Of a DNA stretch of 64,000 nucleotides, positions 13,721 through 63,422 are shown piece by piece (the stretch's first letter is position 1; every line of letters starts with the position of its first letter). The notes under the pieces were generated by a model that saw nothing but the letters and a program-made list of their open reading frames with translations, ran no database searches and was not told where the DNA came from. The position numbers and the translations under genes are program-made. The DNA lies in the IMG/VR virus record IMGVR_UViG_3300030294_000005, positions 62,001 to 126,000 of that record; one strand, given 5' to 3'.

Positions 13721-15058
13721 ATGGGATTAAATAATCATTCAGTATTCTTATTAAATGATAGTACAGTGAAGGCAGTAGGATCTAATAGCAATGGACAATG
13801 TGGGGTTGGATCTATAACCCCTACTAATCAATTAGCTTTATATCTTATACCAAGTCTTAATAATGTAAAACAAATAGCATGTGGTACTAGTTATACTATA
13901 TTTTTATTGAGTGATGGTACAGTAAAAACTATAGGATCTAATGGTTTTGGACAATGTGGCACTGGTAATATTACTACACCACAATTAACTTTATACGCTA
14001 TACCTAGTTTAACTAATGTAAAACAAATAGCATGTGGAAGTGCATTTTCGGTATTTTTATTAAATGATGGTACAGTAAAAACAATAGGAGATAATAGCTT
14101 TGGACAATGCGGTAATAGTGCAACTACTGGTACTAATCAATTAACTTTATTTACTATACCTAGTTTAACTAATGTAAAATCAGTATCATGTGGTAGTAGT
14201 CATTTAGTATTTTTATTAAATGATGGTACAGTAAAAACAGTAGGAAGAAATTTTTTCGGGCAATGTGGTACTGGTACTACTACTACTCAAACAGTACCAT
14301 TTATTATGCCAGGATTGACTAATGTAAAACAAGTAGTAGCTGGTAATGGTCATTCTGTCTTCTTATTAAACGATGGAACAGTAAAAACTATAGGACAGAA
14401 TGATGGCGGACAATGTGGTACTGGTAATACCACTACACCACAATTATCTTTATATACTATACCAAGTTTAACTAATGTAAAATCAATATCATGTGGAGCT
14501 TATCATAATGTATTTTTATTAAATGATGGTACGATAAAAACAGTAGGTCAGAATGATAGTGGGCAATGTGGTACTGGTAATACTACTACCCCACAATTAA
14601 CTTTATATACTATACCAAGTCTTAGTAATGTAAAACAAATATCATGTGGACAAAGTAATTCAATTTTCTTATTAAATGATAACACAGTAAAAGCAATAGG
14701 ATATAATAATTATGGACAATGTGGTAATGGTAGTACTAATGCAGTGCAATTAACTTTATATACTATACCTAGTTTAATTATTAAATGTTTATGGGATAAT
14801 GTACTAATAATTATTATAAAATATTTAATAAAACAATATTCAGCATACTATTCTATTAAGTCAACTTATTATGATGGATCAAATTATAAACCATTAACTC
14901 TAACTGGTGGATCTGTACCTAATAAAGCTGATATAGAATTATATGGATTTGACAGTATTAATGATCTTAATACATCAATCACCATAGGAAGTGAAACCTT
15001 TAAACCAATAAATAAATTACTTAATATATTTAGTATAAAAGAATATATAAGTAAATAA
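13721..15058 (+). CDS. RCC1/BLIP-II repeat beta-propeller protein
   Basis: Seven repeats of about 52 aa: VKQIACG..HSVFLLNDGTVKT.G.N..GQCG.G. Confidence 0.9.
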   Translation: MGLNNHSVFLLNDSTVKAVGSNSNGQCGVGSITPTNQLALYLIPSLNNVKQIACGTSYTIFLLSDGTVKTIGSNGFGQCGTGNITTPQLTLYAIPSLTNVKQIACGSAFSVFLLNDGTVKTIGDNSFGQCGNSATTGTNQLTLFTIPSLTNVKSVSCGSSHLVFLLNDGTVKTVGRNFFGQCGTGTTTTQTVPFIMPGLTNVKQVVAGNGHSVFLLNDGTVKTIGQNDGGQCGTGNTTTPQLSLYTIPSLTNVKSISCGAYHNVFLLNDGTIKTVGQNDSGQCGTGNTTTPQLTLYTIPSLSNVKQISCGQSNSIFLLNDNTVKAIGYNNYGQCGNGSTNAVQLTLYTIPSLIIKCLWDNVLIIIIKYLIKQYSAYYSIKSTYYDGSNYKPLTLTGGSVPNKADIELYGFDSINDLNTSITIGSETFKPINKLLNIFSIKEYISK

Positions 15059-36536: not shown

Positions 36537-39500
36537 ATGATATTTTTAGACGAATTGGATAATCTAAAATTATATAAAAAACAATTGTTTTTACCAATAA
36601 ACGAAAAAAATAAAAGAAAAGGTTCTGCCGTTTTTTTATTAACTCCAAATTATGAATCATCTAAAAAATTAATGAATAATGATAGTTTAGTTACCAGATG
36701 GTTTGAAAGTTATTATATAGAGAAGGATATATCATATTTTATAAATCAAGAAGGATATATTGTTCTTAATGATAATATTCCATATAATGTATTAAATGAA
36801 GAATTAAGAAATAGAATTGTTGTTACTAATACAAATAATATTATAAATGAAGCAGCAACAGATACTAAATTGGTTAAAGTTAAAGATCATCCATTATATG
36901 ATTATCTAAACTTTGATGAATATGATCCAGATGATATAATAGAGATTCCAATTTCTGATATAAAAGGAACTAATTTAGCTGAAGCTGATATACCTAATAC
37001 TTTAAAAGATCCAAAGAGTCTTCAAAGAGCATTGAAAATAAGGATGAGAAAACCTATAAATAGATTAAAGAGAATAGATCCTACTGACCCATCTAATACT
37101 GCAGCCCAAGTAGAAAAGATACAAGCATTAATGAATGAAAGTGCTTTAACTACAGAAGAGAAGAAAAAATTAAAAGATTCAGATTATGGATTATTAAAAA
37201 AGAAAAAATATCCTATGCCAGATAAGGAGCATGTACTATCAGCTATAAGATTTTTTAATTATGTAGATTCTGAGGATGAAAAAGAATTAGCTGATAATAT
37301 AAATAAAAAAATAAAAGAATATAAGATTGAAGATCAAGTTAATGTAGGAAAGAATAATAGATTTTCTAAATATTGCAATGAAGAATCTATAAAAGAATAT
37401 TTTAATTCTGAATCAACTCCTATTATATATGATTTACATTGTGCATTTTTAAAGTTCTTAGATGGACATTCTACAGAAGATGAAATGCTTTCAGATGTAG
37501 ATGTGAGATTTAAAGATAATAGTGAATTAATGAATGATGGATTAATAAATGACATTGATATATTTAATGACATTTCTGATTGTATATCATTTTATCTACC
37601 AAGATTAATTGATAAATGCAAATGCGATATAACTAAAATATTGAATAAATATTTATTCAATGATGATCTACAAGAATCATATATGGTAGGACATGTAGTC
37701 AAAGACTATTCAATTGACAAAATGGGACTAATGACAAAAGATTCTTTAATTATGTTTAATGAGAATATGGATGAAACAATAATGAATGAAGCAAATAAAG
37801 ATTACAATCCTGTTCTTTATAAGTTATTATATAATGAAAGATATAGAACTCCTAAAGAAGTAATAGCAATATATGATAATGTAAAGATAGATGCTCCTTA
37901 TATAACTAAAACATATTTAGATTATACTAAATATAGTAAACTCAATCTATTTGTAGATCTATCTTTCTATAACCAAACCTTCTTTAAAAATAATATATAT
38001 AAATTAGATAAGGGTATAGATTTATATTTTGAGTTTATAACAAGATTCTTAAAAGATTCTAGATTGGGAGCTGCGGGATATAATAAGAAAACTGTATTCA
38101 TTCCTGTTGATGACTGGACTAAACCTGATATGAAAAAAGTATATAACTATACTGAAGATATAAATCCGTTATCAATGATTTGTAGACTTATGGGGACTAC
38201 CAAATTATTAAATATACAACAAGAGTGGAAAGATATTGTATTAGTATTATTCTCTGCTCAAGGATATTTTAAAATAGATATCAATAGTTTAGTTGATAAA
38301 GATATAAGTCAAATACAAGTATTATTAAATAAACTAAAAAATAAAGATGTATCAATAGCAACTGATAATATAGATTCTCCTAAGGCTATAGTAGCTACTA
38401 TTGTAGATAAGATTGAAATTAGTCAAAATATAGAAATTAATAATTTGACTGGTAAAGCAGCAAAAGGAACTATATCTAATGGTGAGTTAGATGATAAGTT
38501 AAGTAATTCTGTTACATCTAAAACTGTTATTGATATTAATAAAAATGCACCTTCTGAAGATGTAGCACAGAATGATGATTTAAAAAATGAATTAGTTACT
38601 AAATTAAAAGATGCTTCTAAAGATGCTGCTTCAACTAATAATGTATTAGATGACATAAATAATGATGATGATATTAAAAAAATAATAGATACATTGTCAA
38701 CACAAGAAGATAATTCAGTAAAAATTAATGCAGCAAGATCAGCTAGAGTAACTAAATTGAACAATGATTTTTTAGACAGTAAGTTAAAAGAAACTACAGT
38801 AAAACAAATGATTGAACATGCTACCAATAATGAGCCTATCCCAAAAACTGAATTAAAAATAGATAGTGTGAATGAAGAGTGGAAAGACTTACGTTATATG
38901 AATTTTGAAAAAATATATAATCCAGCTGATGATATAGTAACTATGATAAATAGTTTTTCAGATAAAACAGCTCCAGTTATGGTACGAAATTTAAATATAG
39001 AAGACTCTTCTACTACAGAAGATTATAAAGATACCTGGACTGCTGAAATGGAAGATGTAAATGGAACTAGGTTTACATTAAAATTCGATATACCTAAATT
39101 TAAAGAAAATAAATTTATGTTATTAGGTGGTAATGAAAAAACAATAAATGGACAACTTGTATTATTACCTATAATAAAAACTGATGAAGATACTGTTCAG
39201 ATAGTTTCAAATTATAATAAAATATTTATAAGAAGATTTGGAACATCTAAAGGAAAATCTAATATAGTTGCTAATAGATTAATAAAAGCATTATCTAAAG
39301 AAAATCCCTTTAAAGTAGTTCCTGGAGATAATACAAAGATATGTTCTAAATATGAATTACCAATAGACTATATAGATTTAGCCTCACAATATTCTAAAAT
39401 AGAAACTAAGAAGCATATATTTTATTTTAATCAAGATGAAATAAGGGAGAAATATAAAGATACTATAGATCTTAAAAAAGGAATTCCAATATGTGTTGAA

Positions 39501-41780
39501 AAAGTTTCTAATAATATTATATATTTTAATGGTGATAATAATCAACAATTAGCAAATCTAATAAGATCTCAATTAATAATAGATGATTCATCATTTGAAG
39601 AAATATTTGAAAATACATCAATTGCTTCAAGATATACCTACTCAAAGGCTAGTATACTGAACACTGAGATTCCTCTAATACTCGTTATGGCATATAGTGA
39701 AGGTTTGCCTAAAGTGTTAAAGAAAGCCCATATAAATTACGAAATAATAGAAAAGAGACCAGCTTATGATAAGAATACCCAAGATATTATAAAATTTAAA
39801 GATGCATATATTTTATATACTTTAGATTATAATTCATCTTTATTGATGAATGGATTTAAAGAATGTGGAACTGAATTATATTCAATTTCAGAGATAACTA
39901 ATAAAACTATGTATTTAGATTTTCTTGATTTATTTGGCGGTAGATTAAGAGCAGATGGTCTTGATAACTTTCATGATTTAATGATAGATGTACCTATCAC
40001 AAAAGAAATATTAGAGTATTATAAACTACCAACTGATTATATAGAAGTTTTAGCTTATGCTAATTCACTGCTAGGAGATAATAAATATATAAGACATACT
40101 GATCAACGTGGTAGAAGGTATAGATCTAATGAAATAGTTGCTGGATATGCTTATCAAGCATTGGCTGATTCATATGGAGAATATAAAAGAAAGTTGAATC
40201 AATCAAGAAAAGCTACAATGGTTATAAAACAAAATGAAGTAATAAATAGAATCTTATTAGATCCAACAGCTTCTGATTTATCTACATTAAATCCAATACT
40301 AGAGCAAGAAGCTATGAATACTGTTAGTACAAAAGGACTAGTAGGAATGAACTCTGATAGAGGTTATAGTTTAGATAAAAGAACATTTGATAAATCAATG
40401 ATAAATGTATTAGGATTATCTACAGGGTTTGCTGGTAATGTTGGTATCTCAAGACAAGCAACAATAGATATGAATATAGAAGGTAAACGTGGATATATAA
40501 AAGTAACTGATGATCCAGCTGATTTAAATGTAACTAAATCTTTAACTATAACTGAAGCATTAACTCCATTCGGTACTAATATGGATGATCCATTTAGATC
40601 TGCAATGACATTTATACAAACATCTAAACATGGAATGAGAATAGCAAAAGGAATGCCTTCATTAATAACTAATGGAGCAGATGAAGCTTTGCCATTTATG
40701 GTTACTGATAAATTTGCATTTAAAGCTAAAGAAGATGGAAAAGTTATAGAGAGGTCAGATGATTATATGATAGTGCAATATAAATCTGGTGCTAAAGATT
40801 TTGTTGATTTAAGAAATAATATTAAAAAGAATTCTGATGGAGGTTTCTATATAACTTTAAAGCTAGACTCTGATTATAAAAAAGATAAAACATTTAAAAA
40901 AGATAATATACTTGCATATGATAAATTATCATTTTCAGATATGGTAGGTCATACAGATGATATTGGTTATAATTTAGGAGTATTGGTAAAAATAGCAATA
41001 TTAAATACTGATGAAGGTTATGAAGATAGTGCAATAATTTCAGAATATTTATCTGAAGCAATGGCATCTGAAGTTGTTGTAATGAAAGATATATCATTAC
41101 CAAAAAATACTAATATTTATAATATTGTAAAGAAAGGCGAACCAATTCAAGAAGGAGATCCATTAATAATATTTCAGAACTCTTTTGATGAAGAAGATGC
41201 CAATTTACTATTAAAGAATCTAGCTGGAGATGAAGAAGATATATCTGATCTTGGAAGAATTAGAGTTAAGTCTAAAATAACTGGAAATGTAGAGAATGTC
41301 AAAATCTATAGAACAGTTGAAAAAGAAGAGTTATCTGATTCTCTTAAGAAAACAGTAAATCAAATAGAAAAACCAACAAAGCAATTAAAAGATGTAATGA
41401 AAAAATATGATATAGATGAGTATAATAAACTGGACCCAGATTATAAACTTGATTCAACTGGAAAACTTAAAAATACAGATGATGGAATCCTGATAGAGTT
41501 CTATTTAAAATATAAAGATAAAATGTCTGTAGGAGATAAGTTAATATATTATTCAGCATTAAAAGGTGTTATAAAAGATATATTCCCACTTGGTAAAGAA
41601 CCATCATCTGAGTTTAGAAAAGATGAAAAAATTCATACACTCCTTGCATGTTCCTCAGTTAATGGTAGAATGGTGGGAAGTATATTATTATCTGCCCCTA
41701 TAAATAAAATAGTAATAGAATTAGATAGAGCAGTTAAAACTGAATTAGAAATACCATTTAAATATTTAGATGAGGAATAA
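36537..41780 (+). CDS. Phage multisubunit RNA polymerase beta-like subunit (probably virion RNAP) with long N-terminal extension
   Basis: DDPFRSAM..IQ..H (cf. RpoB DDANRALM..NMQRQ), GYEDSAIISE (GYNFEDS), GDKLIYYSALKGVI (GDKMAGRHGNKGV), SVNGRM (PSRM); late promoter and xxE/[SA] sites in the leader. Confidence 0.85.
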   Translation: MIFLDELDNLKLYKKQLFLPINEKNKRKGSAVFLLTPNYESSKKLMNNDSLVTRWFESYYIEKDISYFINQEGYIVLNDNIPYNVLNEELRNRIVVTNTNNIINEAATDTKLVKVKDHPLYDYLNFDEYDPDDIIEIPISDIKGTNLAEADIPNTLKDPKSLQRALKIRMRKPINRLKRIDPTDPSNTAAQVEKIQALMNESALTTEEKKKLKDSDYGLLKKKKYPMPDKEHVLSAIRFFNYVDSEDEKELADNINKKIKEYKIEDQVNVGKNNRFSKYCNEESIKEYFNSESTPIIYDLHCAFLKFLDGHSTEDEMLSDVDVRFKDNSELMNDGLINDIDIFNDISDCISFYLPRLIDKCKCDITKILNKYLFNDDLQESYMVGHVVKDYSIDKMGLMTKDSLIMFNENMDETIMNEANKDYNPVLYKLLYNERYRTPKEVIAIYDNVKIDAPYITKTYLDYTKYSKLNLFVDLSFYNQTFFKNNIYKLDKGIDLYFEFITRFLKDSRLGAAGYNKKTVFIPVDDWTKPDMKKVYNYTEDINPLSMICRLMGTTKLLNIQQEWKDIVLVLFSAQGYFKIDINSLVDKDISQIQVLLNKLKNKDVSIATDNIDSPKAIVATIVDKIEISQNIEINNLTGKAAKGTISNGELDDKLSNSVTSKTVIDINKNAPSEDVAQNDDLKNELVTKLKDASKDAASTNNVLDDINNDDDIKKIIDTLSTQEDNSVKINAARSARVTKLNNDFLDSKLKETTVKQMIEHATNNEPIPKTELKIDSVNEEWKDLRYMNFEKIYNPADDIVTMINSFSDKTAPVMVRNLNIEDSSTTEDYKDTWTAEMEDVNGTRFTLKFDIPKFKENKFMLLGGNEKTINGQLVLLPIIKTDEDTVQIVSNYNKIFIRRFGTSKGKSNIVANRLIKALSKENPFKVVPGDNTKICSKYELPIDYIDLASQYSKIETKKHIFYFNQDEIREKYKDTIDLKKGIPICVEKVSNNIIYFNGDNNQQLANLIRSQLIIDDSSFEEIFENTSIASRYTYSKASILNTEIPLILVMAYSEGLPKVLKKAHINYEIIEKRPAYDKNTQDIIKFKDAYILYTLDYNSSLLMNGFKECGTELYSISEITNKTMYLDFLDLFGGRLRADGLDNFHDLMIDVPITKEILEYYKLPTDYIEVLAYANSLLGDNKYIRHTDQRGRRYRSNEIVAGYAYQALADSYGEYKRKLNQSRKATMVIKQNEVINRILLDPTASDLSTLNPILEQEAMNTVSTKGLVGMNSDRGYSLDKRTFDKSMINVLGLSTGFAGNVGISRQATIDMNIEGKRGYIKVTDDPADLNVTKSLTITEALTPFGTNMDDPFRSAMTFIQTSKHGMRIAKGMPSLITNGADEALPFMVTDKFAFKAKEDGKVIERSDDYMIVQYKSGAKDFVDLRNNIKKNSDGGFYITLKLDSDYKKDKTFKKDNILAYDKLSFSDMVGHTDDIGYNLGVLVKIAILNTDEGYEDSAIISEYLSEAMASEVVVMKDISLPKNTNIYNIVKKGEPIQEGDPLIIFQNSFDEEDANLLLKNLAGDEEDISDLGRIRVKSKITGNVENVKIYRTVEKEELSDSLKKTVNQIEKPTKQLKDVMKKYDIDEYNKLDPDYKLDSTGKLKNTDDGILIEFYLKYKDKMSVGDKLIYYSALKGVIKDIFPLGKEPSSEFRKDEKIHTLLACSSVNGRMVGSILLSAPINKIVIELDRAVKTELEIPFKYLDEE

Positions 41781-43634: not shown

Positions 43635-43666
43635 TTACCTTCACCTCTTTAAATTCTCATTAGTTA

Positions 43667-43710
43667 CATATATATAATATATGTTTATATAATATAAAAA
43701 TTACAAAAAA
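43667..43710 (-). repeat. 44-bp direct repeat copy 1 (early promoter cassette)
   Basis: Identical to 44008-44051. Confidence 0.9.
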
Positions 43711-43987: not shown

Positions 43988-44007
43988 CTCTTTAATTTTA
44001 TTATATT

Positions 44008-44051
44008 CATATATATAATATATGTTTATATAATATAAAAATTACAAAAAA
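44008..44051 (-). repeat. 44-bp direct repeat copy 2 (early promoter cassette)
   Basis: Identical to 43667-43710. Confidence 0.9.
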
Positions 44052-44055
44052 GAAC

Positions 44056-44759: not shown

Positions 44760-45986
44760 TTACTTATCTTTATTTTCTATTACTTCATCTACAGGTTCTC
44801 CTATAACTTCATCTATATTATATTCTTCTTTCTCATAAGTACGTTTATATTCAGGAGTTAATGTGTCATACATAGACTTACCTAAAACTAAATTTATAAT
44901 AGGTTCTACTGTTTCTTGTATTTCCATAGCTAATATTCTTATTTCAGCTTGAGCATGAATATCTGTTCTCAATGCTAGGAATGCTATTAATGATTTAAAT
45001 GTAAATGTCATATATAATGACGTTTGGGCATTGTTTGGTAAGTATGCTCTAGCATCTTCTGGTATTAATCTATTTTCACCTAATGATTTATCATTTAATT
45101 GATTATAGATTTTCATAAGTTCATCGCCTAATTCTTGTAATGTTAACTCACTTGTTGAACCATTAAATCCTATATTATATTTATAATTTACATCATATTT
45201 ATCTTTATATTTATCAGGGGAATTGAATCCAAACTTTTCCGCACAATAATCTACATATCTTTGTGATAGTTGGGTTATTCCATTTCTATGTCTATCTACT
45301 TGTTGAGATATAATTCTTGATATATCTTTAAATAATATAGTGATAGAGCAGAAGTCTAATAAATCTTCTAATGAAAATATCTTATTAGTTTCATTATAGA
45401 TATACATGATATCATCCATGTTTACAATAGAGACGTTGGCACTTAATACTTTATTATTAAAAACAGCTGGATAAGTACAATCTAAATCTATAAATTTAGA
45501 TTCTGACATTATTTCATCTTCTATAAAATCATTTAAATATTCCTTATTAATATTATAGAGATTATTTAATATGATTTTTGCAATAGAATTATCTTGATTA
45601 TCTATATTTCTAAAGATATGTTTATATCCTCTTATAGAACCTCCAATAAGAAAATGTATTTCTTTTCCTATATATTTTATTTTTATATTTAAATATTTAC
45701 ATAGAGTTTCTATTTCTGCTAACTCTATTAGATTTTCTATGTCTAATTGTAATATAAGATATATTACTATATTAGAATGCTCTAGAATTGATTCATGCCC
45801 AGTTGCTACTCTTCTTTTTATATAATCTAATTTAGCTTGTATTCCTACCTCTCCATCTTTGTCATAGCATATTTTACATGCATCATGTATGATATCAATA
45901 TGATTATTAGAATATATGAATTTATCATATACTCCTTTGGTAAATAGTTTATGTTTTTTAATTAGTGATGATAATAATTTCTTCAT
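44760..45986 (-). CDS. thyX: FAD-dependent thymidylate synthase (extended, tandem-type)
   Basis: GHESILEH, ISR.ISQQ.DRHR....QLSQRYV, EDARAYLPN and LR...HAQAEIR.LA; late-type promoter at 46016-46027. Confidence 0.9.
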   Translation of the reverse strand: MKKLLSSLIKKHKLFTKGVYDKFIYSNNHIDIIHDACKICYDKDGEVGIQAKLDYIKRRVATGHESILEHSNIVIYLILQLDIENLIELAEIETLCKYLNIKIKYIGKEIHFLIGGSIRGYKHIFRNIDNQDNSIAKIILNNLYNINKEYLNDFIEDEIMSESKFIDLDCTYPAVFNNKVLSANVSIVNMDDIMYIYNETNKIFSLEDLLDFCSITILFKDISRIISQQVDRHRNGITQLSQRYVDYCAEKFGFNSPDKYKDKYDVNYKYNIGFNGSTSELTLQELGDELMKIYNQLNDKSLGENRLIPEDARAYLPNNAQTSLYMTFTFKSLIAFLALRTDIHAQAEIRILAMEIQETVEPIINLVLGKSMYDTLTPEYKRTYEKEEYNIDEVIGEPVDEVIENKDK

Positions 45987-56908: not shown

Positions 56909-57410
56909 GTTAATGTTTTCTAGTGAATCGAATACTTGGGAAACCCCGATCCAATTTTTCAATAGATTAAATCTAGAATTTAATTTTAATTTGGATGTAT
57001 GCTCATTTCCAGAGACTGCTAAATGTAAAAATTATTTTACACCATCAGACGATGGATTAAGTAAAGACTGGGGATTAAATACTTGTTGGATGAATCCACC
57101 ATACGATCAATGTGCATTATGGATGGAGAAAGCATATCATGAAGCAATTAAGGGAGCTACGGTTGTAGCTCTCATTCCAAGTCGTACAGATACAAGATAT
57201 TTTGATGATTATTGTATGAAAGCTTCTGAAATTAGATTTGTTAAAGGAAGATTAAAATTTGGTAATTCAAAAAATTGTGCTCCATTTCCAAGTATGATAG
57301 TTATATTTAATTATTATAATTGGGATAGGTATATACACATTAGTACTTATAATAAAAATAGATTAAAGTTATTAAGGATGGAAAAATTTAATGTTATAAA
57401 ATTTGTATAG
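56889..57410 (+). CDS. Phage DNA N6-adenine methyltransferase (Dam_phage type)
   Basis: WETP, LDVC, DGL..DW, WMNPPY, LIP.RTDT and IRF.KGRLKF. Confidence 0.9.
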   Translation: MDSSTSELMFSSESNTWETPIQFFNRLNLEFNFNLDVCSFPETAKCKNYFTPSDDGLSKDWGLNTCWMNPPYDQCALWMEKAYHEAIKGATVVALIPSRTDTRYFDDYCMKASEIRFVKGRLKFGNSKNCAPFPSMIVIFNYYNWDRYIHISTYNKNRLKLLRMEKFNVIKFV

Positions 57411-57427
57411 ATAATATTAAAAGGTGG

Positions 57428-57850
57428 ATGATTATTATGGAAAAATGTTTAAGTTGTACTGCTATGACAGGTGATCTATATTGTTTATTAGATGGGGAAC
57501 TAAAAGATGAAATACAATTAAATATGCCTCAATCAGAATGTGAAGTTAATAATGCATATAAAAAAGATAGAATGGCTGACTTTAGAAAAATTAAAATAAT
57601 ACCAAGATCTGAATCATCTTGTACAAAAGAAAAGGTTATATCATTTAATTCAGAAGTATCTATGGAAGATAGTGATATAATATATAAAGCACATTTATCT
57701 AGAGATAAGAATATATTATCATTAGAGTTTGAAGGAGATGTAGTCCCCTATCCTGTATTATCTAAAAAATCTTTTACTATAAGATTAGAAATACCAGAAG
57801 AGGAAGTAGGATGTGGAGAATGTGATACTTGTATAACCCCTATATGCTAA
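57428..57850 (+). CDS. Hypothetical Cys-rich protein
   Basis: CxxC at the N-terminus and CGECDTC at the C-terminus. Confidence 0.6.
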   Translation: MIIMEKCLSCTAMTGDLYCLLDGELKDEIQLNMPQSECEVNNAYKKDRMADFRKIKIIPRSESSCTKEKVISFNSEVSMEDSDIIYKAHLSRDKNILSLEFEGDVVPYPVLSKKSFTIRLEIPEEEVGCGECDTCITPIC

Positions 57851-57870
57851 ATATTAAAAATATATTTAAT

Positions 57871-57880
57871 CATATATTAT
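57871..57880 (+). promoter_or_regulatory. Putative early promoter CATATATTAT
   Basis: Upstream of the kinase operon. Confidence 0.55.
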
Positions 57881-57932
57881 AAATGTGAATAAATATAATA
57901 ATTTTAGATGATTTATTTAAGGAGGGGTTAAT

Positions 57933-58694
57933 TTGCTTAATGACTACTATTCTCCTATTAATAATATGCCTAATAATGGATATGGAATTCAACCAAATCC
58001 GATAGGAAATATTTTGAATATAGGGCAGCAAGGTTATAATGGTGGATATTATAATAATACTTATAATAATTATTATAATCCTTATCTTGCCATAAAAAAT
58101 CATGAATTAATGCAAACACAATTAAGAGAAGAACAAAGAGTTCAATCTTCAATGATGATGATGATAAGTAAAGCTGTAAATAAAGCAGCTGGACAAGAAA
58201 TGCCAAATGAAAGATTAGAAGAGTTGTATGGATATAAAGATCCAGAACGCTATGTTCCTAAGCCAGATAGTATGGAATATGAACAGAATTTAATAGTTGG
58301 AATGTATTTAAATGAAAGTAATTATTTACCACAAGATATTCAATATATAAATTATTTTAATTCAATGTATGATACTGCTAAACAAGAATGTCCAGACAAT
58401 ATTTCAATGTATGATTATAATCAAAAGATGTCAGAGAAGTATGTAAAAATGCTTGTTGATATTGATAAAGAGAAACAAAAAGATGTAAGTAAATTATACA
58501 ATAACAAAGATTATAATAAACTATTAGATATGAATTCTAATGGAAGCAGTTATTTTAATAGTATATTCAATGGAGCAAATGGTAATAGCAATGTATCTAT
58601 AGATGATATGGAAGTTACATTACCAGCTCATTTATCAAATGAATATCAATCAAGAAGAAAACAATTCTTAGATGCAATACTAAATAAGAAATAG
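57933..58694 (+). CDS. Protein with N/Y/G/Q-rich prion-like N-terminus
   Basis: First 50 or so aa: NNMPNNGYGIQPNP...GQQGYNGGYYNNTYNNYYNPY; TTG start after GGAGG. Confidence 0.7.
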   Translation: MLNDYYSPINNMPNNGYGIQPNPIGNILNIGQQGYNGGYYNNTYNNYYNPYLAIKNHELMQTQLREEQRVQSSMMMMISKAVNKAAGQEMPNERLEELYGYKDPERYVPKPDSMEYEQNLIVGMYLNESNYLPQDIQYINYFNSMYDTAKQECPDNISMYDYNQKMSEKYVKMLVDIDKEKQKDVSKLYNNKDYNKLLDMNSNGSSYFNSIFNGANGNSNVSIDDMEVTLPAHLSNEYQSRRKQFLDAILNKK

Positions 58695-58709
58695 AAAGGG
58701 TGAATAATC

Positions 58710-59579
58710 TTGGCTAAAGCAGATATACTTAACATATTATATTCTAAAGATCGTTCACCTTTAGAATTTCATTTTGATTCTTTAGTAATGCCAACTATGC
58801 TATGTTATTTATCACCTCAAGATATACAAGCATTATATAATATAGCATCATCTATCAAGTACAGTTCTAAGATAAATTTAAAATATAAAGAGATAGATAA
58901 CATTATGGTTAATAGAGGATTCAAGAAGTTTCATTCAGGAACTAATAGAATTGTTTATAGTTATTTAGAAGATAGATCATTTTTAGTAAAGATTGCTATA
59001 GATAGAGTTGGATTACGAGATAATCCAGATGAATTTAGCAATCAATTTTTATTAAAACCTTTTGTTACAAGAACATTCGAAGTTAGTCCATGTGGCACTA
59101 TAGCCACAGTTGAAAGAGTAGAACCTATAACAAGCAGACAAGAGTTTATAAGTATAGCTGGAGATGTATTTGATTTATTAAATAAACAAATACTAGGTGA
59201 ATATATCTTAGAAGATATAGGAACTAATTATTTTATGAATTATGGATTAAGAAGTGGATTTGGTCCAGTACTATTGGATTATCCATACTTATTTAAACTT
59301 GATGGAAATAAATTATATTGTAATCAAGTATTAGAAACAGGCCATTTATGTGAAGGATTAATAGACTATGATGCAGGATTTAACAATTTGATATGTTCAA
59401 AATGTGGAAAAAGATATCTTGCAACAGAATTACAAAAGGCTAAGGATAATAAATTAATATTCATGAAGGGTAGTAATGAAATTAATTTAAATATAAAACT
59501 AAAACGAGGTGACAAAATAGTAAAGGATCTTACTAACGATAAAGAAACTGAAACTATTATGTTCAAAAAGAAAGGATGA
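58710..59579 (+). CDS. Atypical protein kinase-fold protein with C-terminal Zn ribbon
   Basis: SGTNR.VY (Gly loop), LVKIA (VAIK Lys), N..E (helix C), EDI....MNYG (catalytic loop), VLLDY (DFG-equivalent), then C..C...CSKC. Confidence 0.65.
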   Translation: MAKADILNILYSKDRSPLEFHFDSLVMPTMLCYLSPQDIQALYNIASSIKYSSKINLKYKEIDNIMVNRGFKKFHSGTNRIVYSYLEDRSFLVKIAIDRVGLRDNPDEFSNQFLLKPFVTRTFEVSPCGTIATVERVEPITSRQEFISIAGDVFDLLNKQILGEYILEDIGTNYFMNYGLRSGFGPVLLDYPYLFKLDGNKLYCNQVLETGHLCEGLIDYDAGFNNLICSKCGKRYLATELQKAKDNKLIFMKGSNEINLNIKLKRGDKIVKDLTNDKETETIMFKKKG

Positions 59580-59585
59580 TTAAAA

Positions 59586-60131
59586 ATGATAATGGTATTA
59601 AAAAGAGGAAATAATGTAGTTAATAATGTACCACAGGTTGCTATTGATGAAGAAATTAATGAAGAGAAAAGTTATTCAAATGTATTAAATGTAAAAGTCA
59701 ATAAAAAACCAGGAATACCTAATCGTATTCCTAGCGAGTCAGATGATAGAATAAATCAAGGTATACTAGAGGAAGAGCATAAAGACTTTAAATTTAATAC
59801 AGCATCTAATTTTATACCAACTCCAACTACTAAAAATAGTGCAGAAAATGCACTTGGAGCTTATGGATTAAGTGATAAAGATTTTGAAGAAGAAGAAACA
59901 TCTGCTCCAAAAATAGTAGATAAATATTCTAATATAAATAAAAAAGATGCAGGTATATTATATAAAAATTCAGTGCCTGTAGATAATGTAAAAGCTGGTG
60001 ATGTTAAATCAGAAGATGTAGAAACTAAAGATGAAATATCAATAGAAGAAAAATATGCTGATCTTGCAAACCCAGAAGATTATGATAGTGTTCAGAAAAT
60101 ACAAAGACGAAAAAATATAGAACAATATTAA
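59586..60131 (+). CDS. Probably disordered acidic protein
   Basis: Low hydrophobicity, rich in E/D/K/N/S/T/P. Confidence 0.65.
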   Translation: MIMVLKRGNNVVNNVPQVAIDEEINEEKSYSNVLNVKVNKKPGIPNRIPSESDDRINQGILEEEHKDFKFNTASNFIPTPTTKNSAENALGAYGLSDKDFEEEETSAPKIVDKYSNINKKDAGILYKNSVPVDNVKAGDVKSEDVETKDEISIEEKYADLANPEDYDSVQKIQRRKNIEQY

Positions 60132-60145
60132 AATAAAAAGGATGC

Positions 60146-60799
60146 GTGATGAAAATGTTTAAAGGAACATTATTTATAACAACAGATGTAAATATATTAC
60201 AGCAATTAGTATATAATAATAAAGTAATTATTATTGGAGAACCAGATCCAGCAATGATTAATGCATTAAATGCTGTAGTTGGGAGTATATTACTTCCTCC
60301 ATATTTAGCTATGATGGCACAGATGGATGGAAATATTAATGAATTTTATAATCAATACTATCTACATCTATATACAAAAGAGCCACAAGAGTTTATAGCT
60401 ACAATATTAAAAGCTTTAACCCTTGGAAAAAATATAGTTATGTATTGTACTGAAGATGAATTTAAATTATGCGGTCAATTCTTATTACAATTCTTACAGA
60501 AAGATTTTGGGATAGTAGTAGGAACGCAAAACAATCAATTCTATTTTGATCCAGCATATACACCTACAGTAACTACATTACTATATATAAATGATCTAGT
60601 TACTGCAGATGAATTATTTATGTTGTATCCAGATACTATTCCAATCAATGATATAATATTACCAAAACTAGTTCAAGAACTTCATCCAGTTGTAGATGAA
60701 CAAACTAAAGATTCATATTTGAAATATTTTGGCGATTTAAATCATAGGGTTAAATTAAATCATAAATTTAGAAAGTCCCCAATATCAATGGGGATGTAA
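60146..60799 (+). CDS. Hypothetical protein, DUF488-like pattern (paralog A)
   Basis: LLPP...F...Y..HL.......I...L..GKNIVMYC. Confidence 0.45.
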   Translation: MMKMFKGTLFITTDVNILQQLVYNNKVIIIGEPDPAMINALNAVVGSILLPPYLAMMAQMDGNINEFYNQYYLHLYTKEPQEFIATILKALTLGKNIVMYCTEDEFKLCGQFLLQFLQKDFGIVVGTQNNQFYFDPAYTPTVTTLLYINDLVTADELFMLYPDTIPINDIILPKLVQELHPVVDEQTKDSYLKYFGDLNHRVKLNHKFRKSPISMGM

Positions 60800-60801
60800 T
60801 A

Positions 60802-61278
60802 ATGCTTGTATTTGGAGATTATAATAGTTTACCTAGAGATGATAGATTTGTAACATTCAATTTATCATCTTTAATAGAGGGATTTGAAATGATAAATATA
60901 GTCCCTCCGTTTATAAAACAATTTAATGATGAAAAGCAATTTGATATAACATATGCAAATTATCTTATATCAGATGATAATGCTTTTTATGAAATGATGA
61001 AAGTTATTATGAGTATATATATGGCTAAGAATGTATATATACTTGTGACAAAGGACGAAACTAGTATCTTTGAGATATTAACGGAATCGTTTCAAAAGTT
61101 TATTCAACAAAGGTACGGAGTAATATCTAGTAATATAAATTGTATTGAAGATTTAGAATATATAGATGATAATCAACAATTTTCTATACAAGGTCTATTT
61201 AATTTAGATATTGATAAAACTAGATTTTGCTATATGTACTATACAAAGTATCCAGAAGAGTTAAAAGTGGAAGAATAG
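60802..61278 (+). CDS. Hypothetical protein, DUF488-like pattern (paralog B)
   Basis: IVPP...F...YANYL......M.VI..I...KNVYIL; aligns by eye with 60146..60799. Confidence 0.45.
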   Translation: MLVFGDYNSLPRDDRFVTFNLSSLIEGFEMINIVPPFIKQFNDEKQFDITYANYLISDDNAFYEMMKVIMSIYMAKNVYILVTKDETSIFEILTESFQKFIQQRYGVISSNINCIEDLEYIDDNQQFSIQGLFNLDIDKTRFCYMYYTKYPEELKVEE

Positions 61279-61328
61279 AGATATTCTTCTGCTTATATTT
61301 TTTTATTTACATAGAGGAGAATAGATAA

Positions 61329-61700
61329 ATGCTATATTATGATAAAGTACCAAATAATATATTGGTTCTTAGAGAGAAAGAAATATCTGTAATTGAATTT
61401 ATAGATTTATTTAAAGAATATGAAAATAATGATGTATTAGTAAATACATTTACTCAAGGATTTTGTTATTGGTTTGCTTTTATATTAAAAACTAGATTTA
61501 AAGATAGTGAAATATATTATAATACTGAAGATCATTTCATGATTAAATTAAATGATAAACTTTATGATATTACTGGAGATTGTACTGATAATTGGAATAA
61601 TAATTGTTTATATTTATGGAATGATTTTATTATTAAATATCCAAACGAATCTAAATGTATAATCAGAGATGTCATAGAAAAGAAAAATACTAAATTTTAA
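61329..61700 (+). CDS. Small papain/transglutaminase-like Cys-His-Asp protein
   Basis: F..G.CY.FA..L, then HF.I, then LYDITG. Confidence 0.5.
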   Translation: MLYYDKVPNNILVLREKEISVIEFIDLFKEYENNDVLVNTFTQGFCYWFAFILKTRFKDSEIYYNTEDHFMIKLNDKLYDITGDCTDNWNNNCLYLWNDFIIKYPNESKCIIRDVIEKKNTKF

Positions 61701-61728
61701 ATCTAAGATTAACATTTTATTAAAAGAG

Positions 61729-62007
61729 GTGATTATAATGATAAGTATAACTGAATTAGGATTTAAAAGTTTTGAGGATATTGCAAATATAGATTTTTCT
61801 TTATTATATCCACAACAACTTATAGTAGGTGGAGTAGAACCGCTGCTTAATAAATATTATGAAAGAAGAGTACAAAATACACAAAATTCGTTTAATAAAG
61901 ATGTACATGATATGATTAAAGAATTTAAATGTATATGTAAATATAGAAAAAGAATAATAAATAGACAAAGATTATATGATAAGAGAAAGAAACGTGGATT
62001 AATATGA
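61729..62007 (+). CDS. Hypothetical basic protein
   Basis: AACA-N6-TA at 61711-61722; GAGGTG RBS. Confidence 0.55.
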   Translation: MIIMISITELGFKSFEDIANIDFSLLYPQQLIVGGVEPLLNKYYERRVQNTQNSFNKDVHDMIKEFKCICKYRKRIINRQRLYDKRKKRGLI

Positions 62008-62816
62008 TTAGTCAATTATATAAAAGAATAAATTATTCTTCAGAATTTTCATATATTATATCAAGATATATAAGAGAATATGATATATCAAAAGCAAATA
62101 TAAATATATTATATTCTTTAAATTTAATAACTAAATCTCAATATGAATATTTAGATAAAGCAGATAGAATGGAAAGACAGGTTATAATAGGATTGATGCA
62201 ACAGAAAGATAATAACATTTCTATTGCATTGAAAAAAGGAATAATAGAAGCAAAGGAACAATTCTTTGTTTCAAATAATATACAAGATAATGAAGTATTA
62301 TGTATAAAGAATGATGCTATATTTCTTATAGATAAGATAGCAGTAAATACTAAGTTTGGTATCGTTGAATTTAAAAATAAAAATACATATACTTCATATT
62401 ATAAATTACCATATAATAATATTGAATTATATTATTATATTGATATAGTAAATAATTTAGAAGTCTTAACCGTTAAAGGAATAAAAGAAGATGCTGCAGT
62501 ATTACATAATAATTACTTTATAGAATTTCTAAAGGTTCTATTCTGTTCAACAGAGACAGAATCAATAGAAGATACTATAGCATTATTAGTTACTTTTTAT
62601 AATAATTATATACAGTTAAATTTAGAAACAGAATATTATAGAGAGTTCAATTCTGAATCTTTAATAAGATTAAAAAGAATGTCTAGATTGTATTCTTTTA
62701 AAGCTGACTTCTTAGAAGAGAAGAATAAGGAGTATATAGATATATCTTTTAATCTTAATATATTAAGATTCCTGCATCAAATCTATTCTGGATTATTATT
62801 TTCTAGAAAAAGATAA
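62004..62816 (+). CDS. Small DNA polymerase palm-like protein
   Basis: IREYDISKAN (motif A-like), R...IG (motif B-like) and CIKNDAIF (motif C-like). Confidence 0.5.
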   Translation: MISQLYKRINYSSEFSYIISRYIREYDISKANINILYSLNLITKSQYEYLDKADRMERQVIIGLMQQKDNNISIALKKGIIEAKEQFFVSNNIQDNEVLCIKNDAIFLIDKIAVNTKFGIVEFKNKNTYTSYYKLPYNNIELYYYIDIVNNLEVLTVKGIKEDAAVLHNNYFIEFLKVLFCSTETESIEDTIALLVTFYNNYIQLNLETEYYREFNSESLIRLKRMSRLYSFKADFLEEKNKEYIDISFNLNILRFLHQIYSGLLFSRKR

Positions 62817-62837: not shown

Positions 62838-63422
62838 ATGAAAATTATTAATTTAAGAAAAGGTGATAAATTAAAATATGTTAAAAGTGCTGTAATGGCT
62901 GGTGCTTGCGAAGGTCAAATTAGTATTATACATTCTGCCAAAAATGAAGACATATCTATAAGTGGTGGAGTTTATGGTATACCTATAAATGGATTATGTG
63001 AGAATTATAAATTTATTAAAGAAGATGGTACTTTAGAAGATATAACTAAAGGATTAGGATATACCGATTTTATAGTAAGAGCAAAAAATTTAGCATTAGC
63101 ATGTTATAAAATAGGAATTGGACAACCATATAGTATAGATTTACCAAAAGAATATTTAAATGAATTAATGCAAGATACATTATTTCAGATATGTAGTTTA
63201 GACGATTCTGCTGCTATTACTCCAGAAAAAAGTCATAAAAATTGGATGGATAGAAAAATTAGATATGGATGGATATATGGTGAAACTGAAAATTTAGAAA
63301 AGAAAACTCATCCAAATCTAATCCCATTTAATAGTCTTTCTGAAATAGAAAAAAATAAATATGTAATAAATAATTTAATGTATAAAGAATTTGAAAAGTT
63401 ATGGAATGAGATATTTAAATAA
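62838..63422 (+). CDS. RyR-domain protein
   Basis: H.NWM..KI..GW.YG......KKTHP.LIPF..L...EK.K is the RyR repeat signature. Confidence 0.8.
   Translation: MKIINLRKGDKLKYVKSAVMAGACEGQISIIHSAKNEDISISGGVYGIPINGLCENYKFIKEDGTLEDITKGLGYTDFIVRAKNLALACYKIGIGQPYSIDLPKEYLNELMQDTLFQICSLDDSAAITPEKSHKNWMDRKIRYGWIYGETENLEKKTHPNLIPFNSLSEIEKNKYVINNLMYKEFEKLWNEIFK

What the first reader, a model, noticed from the sequence alone, without database searches (positions are those of the whole stretch)
57871..61278. Early five-gene operon: prion-like protein + atypical kinase/Zn ribbon + disordered partner + two DUF488-like paralogs
Seen: one early-type promoter precedes five tightly packed genes, with no clear terminator until about 61280. 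Gene 1 has a Tyr/Asn/Gly/Gln prion-like N-terminus and a second N/G/S patch. Gene 2 keeps all core kinase-fold motifs plus a Cys4 ribbon. Gene 3 looks disordered. Genes 4 and 5 are mutual paralogs. Known: T7 gp0.7 shows that phage kinases can reprogram the host, and Tyr-rich low-complexity domains drive phosphorylation-sensitive condensates. Inference: this may be an undescribed phage kinase-regulated scaffold/condensate or host-takeover module, for example one organising a replication compartment.
Basis: partly seen in the sequence, partly recalled or inferred. Interest (0 to 1): 0.8.

Follow-up and report, generated by a model that had tools for sequence, protein, structure and literature searches.

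The report
Conserved early kinase cassette, jumbo phage
An uncultured giant phage from peat switches on, right after infection, a conserved gene cassette built around a minimal protein-kinase-like enzyme; the family is large and strongly conserved, has no cultured member, and its function is unknown.

Summary
An AR9-type early promoter (57872-57887) precedes five packed genes that end at a strong hairpin terminator (61265-61294).

- **Gene 2** models as a protein-kinase fold. Its best structural matches are RIO1/RIO2 and Bud32/PRPK. Its ATP/Mg residues and four zinc-ribbon cysteines are invariant in 51 relatives.
- **Gene 1** has a Tyr/Asn/Gly/Gln-rich low-complexity region, and the family shares this.
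- **Genes 4 and 5** are true paralogs.

Three corrections:
1. Gene 3 is not an independent partner. It is the detached acidic C-terminal tail of the kinase, fused in 146 of the 150 best relatives.
2. The DUF488 label is not supported.
3. The ancestral cassette has a further last gene (62004-62816, the AR9 g239 family) with a DNA-polymerase-B-like palm. Here a terminator and two small inserted genes cut it off.

The order gene 1, kinase, gene 4, gene 5, g8 is kept in all 68 related loci. The kinase core is the best-conserved protein in the neighbourhood. No homolog was found in sequenced cultured phages.

Function is inferred only. I favour an active early phosphotransferase or ATPase tethered to partners encoded in the cassette. 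The condensate idea remains untested.

The parts
57872..57887 (+). AR9-type early (virion RNA polymerase) promoter ATATATTAT-N6-G; predicted transcription start at G57887
   Evidence: Matches the AR9 consensus AAATATATATTAT-(6N)-G+1 (PMC5312081; AR9 annotated promoters). Motif enriched in the window, and the inspected perfect copies lie upstream of ORF starts. The same motif lies 44-60 nt upstream of the gene 1 ortholog in L022, L025 and L036-38.
57933..58694 (+). Gene 1 (253 aa, TTG start after AAGGAGG): mostly disordered protein with a Tyr/Asn/Gly/Gln/Pro-rich N-terminus, recurrent YNPY and PIG..GYN motifs, a second N/G/S patch, and a short conserved C-terminal motif
   Evidence: ORF and RBS. 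Homologs immediately upstream of the kinase in 48 loci, and compositionally similar positional orthologs in others. No Pfam, PHROG, NCBIfam or PADLOC hit.
58710..59579 (+). Gene 2 (289 aa, TTG start, TGA stop): N-terminal helical segment, RIO/Bud32-like minimal protein-kinase fold (about residues 70-200), C4 zinc ribbon (C204, C214, C229, C232), short beta-hairpin region
   Evidence: AF2 model, pLDDT 75, above 90 over the N-lobe. Foldseek PDB: RIOK2, RioK1, PRPK, CaMKII, E about 4e-5, probability 1.00. BFVD: phage kinases. Invariant residues. 1359 representative clusters.
59586..60131 (+). Gene 3 (181 aa): detached acidic disordered C-terminal tail of the kinase. It keeps the GLSDKDFEEE motif and the conserved C-terminal motif ending in Tyr
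   Evidence: Relatives carry it fused. Alignment to the fused tail of P0023, E = 6e-5, and to the separate tail gene of L073, E = 4e-16. Composition. Junction identical in four other peat assemblies.
60146..60799 (+). Gene 4 (217 aa, or 216 aa from the ATG at 60149): compact alpha/beta protein, paralog of gene 5; no conserved catalytic cysteine
   Evidence: AF2 pLDDT 95, pTM 0.89. No significant PDB neighbour. Paralogy with gene 5. Syntenic in 68 of 68 loci.
60802..61278 (+). Gene 5 (158 aa): paralog of gene 4. Shares the core LLPP...FD..Y..YL...G.(N/D)V...(F/Y)G. Starts 2 nt after gene 4
   Evidence: Syntenic in 68 of 68 loci and usually overlaps gene 4 and g8.
61265..61304 (+). Intrinsic-terminator-like hairpin (13 bp stem, loop GAGA) followed by a U tract; overlaps the gene 5 stop codon
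   Evidence: dG -17.1 kcal/mol, z = -4.5, no shuffle of 200 as stable.
62004..62816 (+). g8 (270 aa; AR9 g239 / phrog_21037 family): DNA-polymerase-B-like palm/fingers protein. It is the ancestral last gene of the cassette, separated here by the terminator and two inserted small ORFs
   Evidence: Adjacent to or overlapping gene 5 in most of 67 loci. Atlas structural TM 0.60-0.65 to Pol B polymerase domains. Invariant E25, D27, D104. Homologs in AR9/PBS1, Staphylococcus, Listeria and Fusobacterium jumbo phages.

Best explanation
This is an early-transcribed cassette conserved across a large clade of uncultured AR9/PBS1-related jumbo phages.

**The central enzyme.** It is a catalytically competent, RIO/Bud32-like minimal protein-kinase-fold protein, either an ATP-dependent phosphotransferase or an ATPase switch. 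It carries a C4 zinc ribbon and a long acidic disordered tail that ends in a conserved aromatic C-terminal motif. In this phage a gene fission has split that protein into gene 2 (enzyme) and gene 3 (tail).

**The other components.**
- A Tyr/Asn/Gly/Gln-rich disordered protein (gene 1).
- Two paralogous alpha/beta proteins (genes 4 and 5), probably a non-catalytic heterodimer.
- Ancestrally, a DNA-polymerase-B-like palm protein (g8).

**Shown:** fold, invariant active-site and zinc ligands, synteny, paralogy, fission, and a promoter and terminator matching known signals.

**Inferred:**
- The virion RNA polymerase transcribes the cassette immediately after DNA injection.
- The proteins form one complex, because in relatives the genes abut or overlap.
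- The tail's terminal motif docks the enzyme onto a partner.
- The enzyme phosphorylates, or acts on through ATP hydrolysis, phage partners or nucleic-acid-bound proteins at the onset of replication or host takeover.
For: - **Kinase fold:**; supporting leads.
- **Active enzyme:** G77-T78-N79-R80, K94, E108, D169, N177, D190 and four Cys are invariant in 51 unique sequences down to about 39% identity.
- **Strongest constraint in the region:** kinase core 56/67/80% identity where neighbours are 26-49 / 25-62 / 33-74%.
- **Synteny:** gene 1, kinase, gene 4, gene 5, g8 in 68 loci, with abutting or overlapping genes.
- **Fission:** 146 of the 150 best representatives and 89 of the 120 closest homologs are fused. 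In the 80%-identical relative the tail gene is in another frame. The stop is identical in four independent assemblies.
- **Tail:** D+E 24%, last residue Tyr or Phe in 70 of 89.
- **Early promoter and terminator:**
- **Replication-type neighbourhood:** RNase H, RNase T-like exonuclease, nucleoside deoxyribosyltransferase, Dam.
- **g8 Pol B-like:**
Against: - No biochemical or expression data. No RNA run could be listed.
- No Pfam kinase family reaches threshold. Only 1 of 30 members touches YrbL, at E = 7e-4.
- The catalytic loop is non-canonical (E-D-x-G-T/S-x-x-F-x-N, Asp 8 residues before Asn). Transfer to protein, transfer to a small molecule, or mere ATP hydrolysis cannot be told apart.
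- TM-scores to solved kinases are modest (0.29-0.37 by query), because only about 165 of 289 residues align.
- Complex formation is inferred from gene order only.
- Cultured AR9-like phages keep g8 but show no detectable kinase, gene 4 or gene 5 next to it, so the link to g8 is not universal.
Confidence: 0.55

Rival explanations
1. T7 gp0.7-like host-takeover or anti-defence kinase. The enzyme is a promiscuous early protein kinase that phosphorylates host proteins (RNA polymerase, nucleic-acid-binding defence proteins). The zinc ribbon and tail bias it toward nucleic-acid-bound targets. The neighbouring genes are unrelated early genes that merely travel with it.
For: Early promoter. Structural neighbours in BFVD include T7-like, Xylella, Ralstonia and Bacillus phage kinases. 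The Atlas lists Phage_T7_kinase and Kinase-PolyVal clusters among its nearest named hits. T7 kinase uses a C-terminal DNA-binding domain to bias its targets (PMC13645617).
Against: Pfam listed no match to the T7 kinase family, or to any kinase family other than one weak YrbL hit, for any of the 30 members scanned. The metal-binding motif is D-Y-P, not the DPV that characterises T7 kinase homologs. Rigid five-gene synteny with overlapping genes across 68 loci argues against unrelated neighbours. The kinase core is also the best-conserved protein in the neighbourhood.
Confidence: 0.2
2. One reading: a kinase-regulated condensate or scaffold. Gene 1's Tyr-rich low-complexity domain phase-separates to organise an early replication or transcription compartment. 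The kinase tunes this by phosphorylating gene 1 and/or its own tail.
For: The Tyr/Asn/Gly/Gln bias of gene 1 is a conserved family property and not a chance feature of one AT-rich genome: 0.30-0.40 in nearly all of the 40 distinct relatives against 0.22 +/- 0.05 background, in loci of 24-39% GC. Gene 1 abuts or overlaps the kinase gene. The cultured relatives of this phage are AR9/PBS1-type phages; to my recollection that group has no chimallin shell, and I did not test for one here.
Against: No test of phase separation or phosphorylation is possible here. PLAAC was not run. In the most distant loci (L053-L065) the upstream ORF is much longer (575-977 aa) and only weakly biased. The model leaves genes 4 and 5 and the Pol B-like g8 unexplained.
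Confidence: 0.12
3. A replication-initiation or DNA-end-processing machine. The kinase-fold enzyme works as an ATPase switch or nucleotidyl/phosphoryl transferase on nucleic acid, not as a protein kinase. It acts with the Pol B-like palm protein g8 and the gene 4/5 pair. Its acidic tail with a terminal aromatic residue docks on the polymerase, as the C-terminal tails of SSB and T7 gp2.5/gp4 do.
For: g8 is coupled to gene 5 in most loci, and its two palm aspartates are invariant. The best structural matches, RIO and Bud32/PRPK, are known (my own knowledge) to act mainly as ATPases inside nucleoprotein machines. Zinc ribbon. Acidic tail ending in Tyr or Phe. The surrounding early genes are replication and nucleotide-metabolism genes.
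Against: The similarity of g8 to Pol B rests on predicted models only. Neither a Pfam search nor a PDB sequence search hit a polymerase. AR9 already has a split Pol B and a primase elsewhere (PMC5312081). The tail analogy is from memory, not tested.
Confidence: 0.13

Closest known systems
RIO kinases (Rio1/Rio2) and Bud32/PRPK, the minimal atypical protein kinases
   Same: They are the best structural matches. Like them, gene 2 has a small kinase core with no activation segment or substrate-binding subdomains. It has a beta3 Lys, an alphaC Glu, a catalytic-loop Asn, and a metal-binding Asp followed by an aromatic residue and Pro (LLDYPY). It has an extra N-terminal helical part, as Rio2 does.
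   Different: No sequence-level membership: Pfam listed no RIO match. The catalytic loop is 3 residues longer. The C-lobe is followed by a C4 zinc ribbon and a 150-500 aa acidic tail. It is encoded by phages, inside a five-gene cassette.
Phage T7 gp0.7 kinase (T7K) and other small phage Ser/Thr kinases
   Same: Early phage gene, small kinase domain with a C-terminal extension. Structural neighbours in BFVD.
   Different: D-Y-P instead of the family's DPV motif. Pfam listed no T7 kinase match. Very strong sequence conservation and fixed partner genes.
AR9/PBS1 early transcription units (virion RNA polymerase promoters)
   Same: The same promoter consensus ATATATTAT-N6-G. The same kind of multisubunit RNA polymerase gene lies in the window. 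The g239 homolog is shared.
   Different: AR9 and the cultured Staphylococcus, Listeria and Fusobacterium relatives have no detectable gene 2, 4 or 5 homologs next to g239, and gene 2 has no match anywhere in the phage collection. This phage also carries a Thy1-domain gene.
DUF488 (PF04343 / PF22751; E. coli YeaO)
   Same: A weak Pfam match of gene 4 residues 58-115 (E = 0.014). Atlas structural similarity over about 120 N-terminal residues (TM 0.63-0.69 by target).
   Different: Score below the Pfam cut-off (16 against 27 bits). None of the 37 family members hit DUF488 at E <= 0.01. Profile-profile comparison with a YeaO alignment is negative. The cysteines of the window protein are not conserved in the family.
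Split family B DNA polymerases of jumbo phages (PhiKZ DNAP-N / DNAP-C)
   Same: g8 resembles the palm/fingers of Pol B and has invariant Asp residues at the motif A-like and motif C-like positions. Jumbo phages are known to split Pol B (PMC13648687; PMC7824862).
   Different: g8 is only 270 aa and has no exonuclease domain. Motif C is N/K-D-A rather than DxD. AR9 has other polymerase genes, gp152 and gp132. No sequence hit to Pol B.

Membership tests
Protein kinase-like (PKL) superfamily | Bilobal kinase fold (five-stranded N-lobe with an alphaC helix, helical C-lobe with a catalytic loop) | tested here: met
   AF2 model with pLDDT above 90 over residues 20-140. Foldseek probability 1.00 to RIOK2, RioK1, PRPK, CaMKII, ROCK and JAK, with 116 PDB hits at E <= 1e-3. 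103 BFVD hits, many of them annotated kinases.
Protein kinase-like (PKL) superfamily | ATP-anchoring Lys in beta3, paired with a Glu in alphaC | tested here: met
   K94 (VKIA, strand 91-96) and E108 (helix 99-115) are invariant in 51 sequences. The pairing itself is inferred from position, not measured.
Protein kinase-like (PKL) superfamily | Catalytic loop with Asp and an Asn 5 residues later; metal-binding Asp (DFG) about 13 residues after the Asn | tested here: inconclusive
   N177 and D190 are invariant and 13 residues apart, as I recall for PKA N171 and D184. The only invariant Asp upstream is D169, 8 residues before N177; the canonical position 172 holds Thr or Ser. A residue-level structural superposition could not be obtained.
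Protein kinase-like (PKL) superfamily | Sequence match to a curated kinase family above threshold | tested here: not met
   No Pfam or NCBIfam kinase model matches the window protein. One of 30 relatives hits YrbL-PhoP_reg at E = 7e-4. phrog_4301, of unknown function, matches at E = 8e-6.
RIO kinase family | Membership by the RIO1 Pfam model; RIO-type P-loop and flexible loop | tested here: not met
   Pfam listed no RIO match for any of the 30 members. The resemblance is at fold level only. The similarity of GTNRxVY and LLDYP to RIO motifs is recalled from memory and was not tested.
T7 kinase (gp0.7) family | Conserved DPV motif in place of DFG; Pfam Phage_T7_kinase | tested here: not met
   The motif here is D190-Y-P, against DPV (PMC13645617). 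Pfam listed no match to that family. There is only an Atlas feature lead.
DUF488 (PF04343 / PF22751), for genes 4 and 5 | Pfam model above the gathering score | tested here: not met
   Gene 4: 16.1 bits against a cut-off of 27, and 12.6 against 22.2. Gene 5: no hit. None of 37 gene 4 and none of 37 gene 5 relatives hit DUF488 at E <= 0.01. None of the 7 database homologs found carries the domain.
DUF488 (PF04343 / PF22751), for genes 4 and 5 | Profile-profile or structural similarity to bona fide DUF488 proteins | tested here: inconclusive
   hhalign against a YeaO alignment gives probability 0.1-0.2%, but that profile is narrow (at least 70% identity). The Atlas gives TM 0.45-0.48 by query and 0.63-0.69 by target, from a low-confidence model, and a feature score of 0.77, which is in the chance range. 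The high-confidence AF2 model has no PDB neighbour.
Family B DNA polymerase (for g8, 62004-62816) | Palm with the two catalytic Asp residues (motif A and motif C) and a fingers helix | tested here: inconclusive
   The Atlas gives TM 0.60-0.65 by query over about 245 residues to Pol B clusters. E25, D27 and D104 are invariant in 35 sequences, including AR9 g239. No Pfam hit and no PDB sequence hit. Assigning these residues to motifs A and C is my own reading.
AR9-type early promoter | Consensus AAATATATATTAT-(6N)-G+1 upstream of an early gene | tested here: met
   57872-57887 matches 9 of the 13 conserved bases plus the spacing and the G. The motif is enriched, and the inspected perfect copies lie upstream of ORF starts. 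Actual transcription starts are not testable here.
Prion-like / low-complexity domain (gene 1) | Strong Q/N/Y/G compositional bias over at least about 50 residues | tested here: met
   0.68 Y+N+G+Q in residues 3-52, and 0.36 overall against 0.22 +/- 0.05 background. Nearly all of the 40 distinct relatives show the same bias. PLAAC scoring and any prion or condensate behaviour were not tested.

The most novel reading that the evidence does not exclude
The cassette encodes a self-contained, kinase-governed organiser of the early infection centre in jumbo phages of the AR9/PBS1 type, which I recall as not building a protein nucleus. The Tyr-rich disordered gene 1 protein would form a scaffold or condensate. 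The RIO-like enzyme, tethered through its acidic tail, would control that scaffold by phosphorylation or ATP hydrolysis. The gene 4/5 pair and the mini Pol B-like g8 would be recruited there to start phage DNA synthesis.
Probability: 0.1. Interest if true: 0.85.

Novelty: new variant of a known kind. Interest (0 to 1): 0.6.

Why it matters
Phage-encoded kinases have recently been shown to be powerful host-takeover and anti-defence tools (T7 kinase, PMC13645617). The family found here is large: 1359 representative clusters at E <= 1e-3 and 746 at E <= 1e-30. It is the best-conserved protein in its neighbourhood. It sits in a fixed five-gene early cassette. The collection of sequenced cultured phages holds no homolog, and no Pfam family covers it.

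It combines a minimal RIO-like kinase core with a zinc ribbon and a docking tail. It always travels with a Tyr-rich disordered protein, two paralogous proteins with no solved structural relative, and a miniature polymerase-like protein.

Working out its role would say something about how AR9-type jumbo phages set up infection. I recall these phages as not building a protein nucleus. It would also add a new architecture to the atypical kinases.

Tried and rejected
1. **Stop-codon read-through or recoding at the gene 2/3 junction.** In the window the two ORFs are in frame, separated by TGA plus two codons. Rejected for four reasons. TGA ends other well-bounded genes in the window. In the 80%-identical relative L073 the tail gene is in a different frame with its own ATG. 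L022 has an independently split tail in another frame. The junction is identical in four other assemblies, so it is not an assembly error.
2. **Homologs in cultured phages.** megablast and tblastn of gene 2 against 50,697 phage records found nothing. HMM searches of the g239 neighbourhoods of AR9, Staphylococcus AH12, Listeria LPJP1 and Fusobacterium JD-Fnp4 found g8 only.
3. **Genes 4/5 as degenerate guanylate-kinase-like proteins.** A gmk gene sits upstream of g239 in cultured relatives. hhalign was negative.
4. **Genes 4/5 as DUF488.** Pfam on 74 family members, hhalign against YeaO, and Foldseek against the PDB were all negative or sub-threshold.
5. **Defence or anti-defence libraries.** No PADLOC hit.
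6. **Structured RNAs in 57000-62100.** No Rfam match.
7. **PDB sequence searches** for gene 2 and g8 found no relevant hit.
8. **RNA-seq evidence.** No RNA run was listed.
9. **Bacterial genomes.** Only four MAG contigs, one of 246 kb and probably a mis-binned phage, so no host assignment.
10. **The Rhodanese-phosphatase paper that defines DUF488 subclades** could not be read.

Full report
**What the window is.** The window belongs to a 236-kb viral contig, IMGVR_UViG_3300030294_000005. Its GC content is about 25%. The same sequence occurs in at least ten peat metagenome runs.

It encodes a 1747-aa multisubunit RNA polymerase beta-like protein (phrog_3148, E = 1e-140). It shares the 270-aa ORF 62004-62816 with Bacillus phages AR9/PBS1 and with Staphylococcus, Listeria and Fusobacterium jumbo phages. 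It is therefore an uncultured relative of the AR9/PBS1 group.

The 82-nt gap before gene 1 contains ATATATTAT-AAATGT-G at 57872-57887. AR9 early promoters are read by the virion RNA polymerase without new protein synthesis. Their consensus is AAATATATATTAT-(6N)-G+1 (PMC5312081), and the annotated AR9 copies continue with TGAATA, as here.

In the window the extended motif occurs 13 times, against 4.7 +/- 1.8 in shuffles. The perfect copies that I inspected with flanks lie upstream of ORF starts and point at the next gene: 47790, 54335, 54709 and 57872 on the + strand.

No further perfect copy follows before the window ends. Gene 5's stop codon lies inside a 13-bp hairpin followed by a U tract (dG -17.1 kcal/mol, z = -4.5).

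The same promoter motif lies 44-60 nt upstream of the gene 1 ortholog in four other lineages.

**Gene 2 is a kinase-fold enzyme.**
- An AlphaFold2 model built from 30 relatives has pLDDT 75, and above 90 across the N-lobe.
- Foldseek against the PDB gives 116 hits at E <= 1e-3, all kinases. RIOK2, RioK1, archaeal Rio2 and PRPK/Bud32 lead the list.
- Against viral models, the hits after two family members are small phage kinases.
- Sequence methods barely see the relationship. The window protein has no Pfam or NCBIfam hit. One relative touches YrbL at E = 7e-4. phrog_4301, of unknown function, matches at E = 8e-6.

In 51 unique family members down to about 39% identity, the following are invariant:
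- G77-T78-N79-R80, the nucleotide-loop position.
- K94 in strand beta3, and E108 in the following helix.
- D169, G171, N177 and D190.
- The four zinc-ribbon cysteines.

N177 and D190 have what I recall as the canonical spacing (13 residues). D169 lies three residues further from N177 than a canonical catalytic Asp would.

I read this as an active enzyme with an atypical catalytic loop. Whether it transfers phosphate to protein, transfers it to something else, or mainly hydrolyses ATP as RIO and Bud32 do, cannot be decided here.

**Gene 3 is the kinase's own tail.**
- Most relatives are 420-800 aa proteins whose first ~285 residues match gene 2.
- Of the 150 best representatives in an exhaustive search, 146 are longer than 314 aa. 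Of the 120 closest homologs, 89 are fused.
- Gene 3 aligns with these tails through GL(S/T)xxDFEE and a conserved C-terminal motif ending in Tyr.
- The tails are acidic (D+E 24%) and poor in hydrophobic residues. They end in Tyr or Phe in 70 of 89 cases.

In the window the two ORFs are in frame, separated by TGA and two codons. I considered read-through or recoding and rejected it. TGA ends other well-bounded genes in the window. In the 80%-identical biogas relative the tail gene has its own ATG in a different frame. L022 shows an independent split. The junction is letter-identical in four other peat assemblies. This is a real, lineage-specific gene fission.

**Gene 1.** The Tyr/Asn/Gly/Gln bias is 0.36 overall and 0.68 in residues 3-52, against 0.22 +/- 0.05 in other ORFs.
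- Forty distinct homologs, nearly all with the same bias, lie directly upstream of the kinase in loci of 24-39% GC. They share recurrent SPI, PIG..GY and YNPY motifs.
- Most loci without a detected homolog still have a Q/P/G/Y-rich ORF in that position.
- Apart from these short motifs and a C-terminal DD.E..LP...Y..RR..F element, the family is poorly conserved.

**Genes 4 and 5.** They are paralogs by profile-profile comparison: probability 96.3%, E = 1.8e-9 over 80 columns.

Gene 4 models with pLDDT 95 as a compact alpha/beta protein. It has no significant neighbour in the PDB; the best E-value is 0.2.

The DUF488 label rests on one sub-threshold Pfam hit in the window protein only (16 bits against a cut-off of 27), and on an Atlas lead from a low-confidence model. 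Against it:
- None of 74 family members hit DUF488.
- Comparison with a YeaO profile is negative.
- The two cysteines of the window protein are not conserved in the family.

I treat DUF488 membership as not shown. The family's few near-invariant residues (L49, P51, Y71, L75, G122 in gene 4; Y105, D117 in gene 5) do not look like a catalytic set, so a structural or adaptor role is more likely.

**Synteny and the missing sixth gene.** In all 68 related loci the order is gene 1, kinase with tail, gene 4, gene 5. These come from 66 viral contigs, many of 150-313 kb, plus other assemblies. In 67 of them the next conserved gene is the homolog of window ORF 62004-62816 ("g8").

In relatives the genes usually abut or overlap, which suggests coupled translation. 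In the window, g8 has been separated from gene 5 by the terminator and two small ORFs, one of them YunG-like.

g8 resembles the polymerase domain of family B DNA polymerases in predicted structure: TM 0.60-0.65 over about 245 residues. It has invariant E25, D27 and D104 at positions that I read as motifs A and C. It has no sequence-level hit.

The surrounding early region encodes RNase H, an RNase T-like exonuclease, a nucleoside deoxyribosyltransferase and a Dam methylase.

Cultured AR9-like phages keep g8 next to a guanylate kinase gene, but no kinase-fold, gene 4 or gene 5 homolog was detected there.

**Constraint.** Against three relatives of increasing distance, the kinase core is 80, 67 and 56% identical. 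Neighbouring proteins are 33-74, 25-62 and 26-49% identical. The tail is the least conserved part: 33% identity where the core is 80%.

**Interpretation.** I favour an early, catalytically active kinase-fold enzyme that works inside a complex with the cassette's other products. The tail's terminal motif would serve as a docking element.

The known systems it most resembles in operation are the early phage kinases (T7 kinase: PMC13645617) and the RIO/Bud32 ATPase-kinases. It is a member of neither family by the tests above.

None could be tested with the tools at hand.

**Novelty.** The fold and the idea of an early phage kinase are known. The following appear undescribed:
- The architecture: minimal kinase, zinc ribbon and docking tail.
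- The fixed partnership with a Tyr-rich disordered protein, two paralogous proteins with no solved structural relative, and a mini polymerase-like protein.
- The size of the family, with no member found among sequenced cultured phages.

No curated library names the family, and the literature searches found no paper describing it.

Noticed in passing
window 62004-62816 (+): A 270-aa protein of the AR9 g239 / phrog_21037 family. Its predicted structure resembles the palm/fingers of family B DNA polymerases (TM 0.60-0.65), and E25, D27 and D104 are invariant. It is conserved from AR9/PBS1 to Staphylococcus, Listeria and Fusobacterium jumbo phages, and is annotated 'hypothetical' in the records inspected.
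   Followed up: partly
window 44760-45986 (-): A 408-aa protein with a Thy1 (ThyX-type thymidylate synthase) domain, E = 2e-30. According to Iyer et al. 2021 (PMC7824862), uracil-DNA phages such as PBS1 lack Thy1. This AR9-like phage therefore probably does not replace thymine by uracil, although it uses the same early promoter.
   Followed up: no
window 61329-61700 and 61729-62007 (+): Two small ORFs, one of them YunG-like (PF24591, E = 4e-13), are inserted between gene 5 and g8 together with the terminator. The closest relatives have either nothing there or a single 64-aa ORF.
   Followed up: partly
window 43664-43710 and 44005-44052 (-): Two nearly identical copies of an early promoter with about 30 nt of identical upstream sequence (ttttttgtaatttttatattatataaacATATATTATatatatg) lie about 340 nt apart, each in front of a small gene. 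This looks like a duplicated promoter cassette.
   Followed up: no
window 22337-33085 (-): A single 3582-aa ORF, by far the largest in the window. It was not analysed.
   Followed up: no
window 36537-41780 (+): A 1747-aa multisubunit RNA polymerase beta-like protein (phrog_3148, E = 1e-140). In AR9 the beta homologs are split into shorter polypeptides, so this may be a fused form.
   Followed up: no
window 13721-15058 (+) and 62838-63422 (+): An RCC1-repeat (WD40_RLD) protein, E = 3e-104, and a RyR-domain protein, E = 9e-11. These are eukaryote-like repeat domains in a phage genome.
   Followed up: no
window 59460-59620 (end of gene 2 and start of gene 3): The fission point lies between two copies of a short beta-hairpin-like motif (I/V)xLKRGxxx(I/V): NIKLKRGDKIV at the end of gene 2 and MVLKRGNNVV at the start of gene 3. 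The two pieces might reassemble non-covalently.
   Followed up: no
L006, L020, L029-31, L066 (between the kinase and gene 4); L024, L027-31, L040 (between gene 5 and g8): In several relatives 0.5-2.5 kb of extra DNA is inserted at these two junctions of the cassette. These may be hot spots for insertion of accessory genes. The contents were not examined.
   Followed up: no
L076 (JAQUZN010000001.1, 246 kb): A 246-kb contig filed in a 'Candidatus Izemoplasmatales' MAG carries the kinase gene at 54% identity and has the size of these jumbo phages. It is probably a phage contig binned with a low-GC genome.
   Followed up: no
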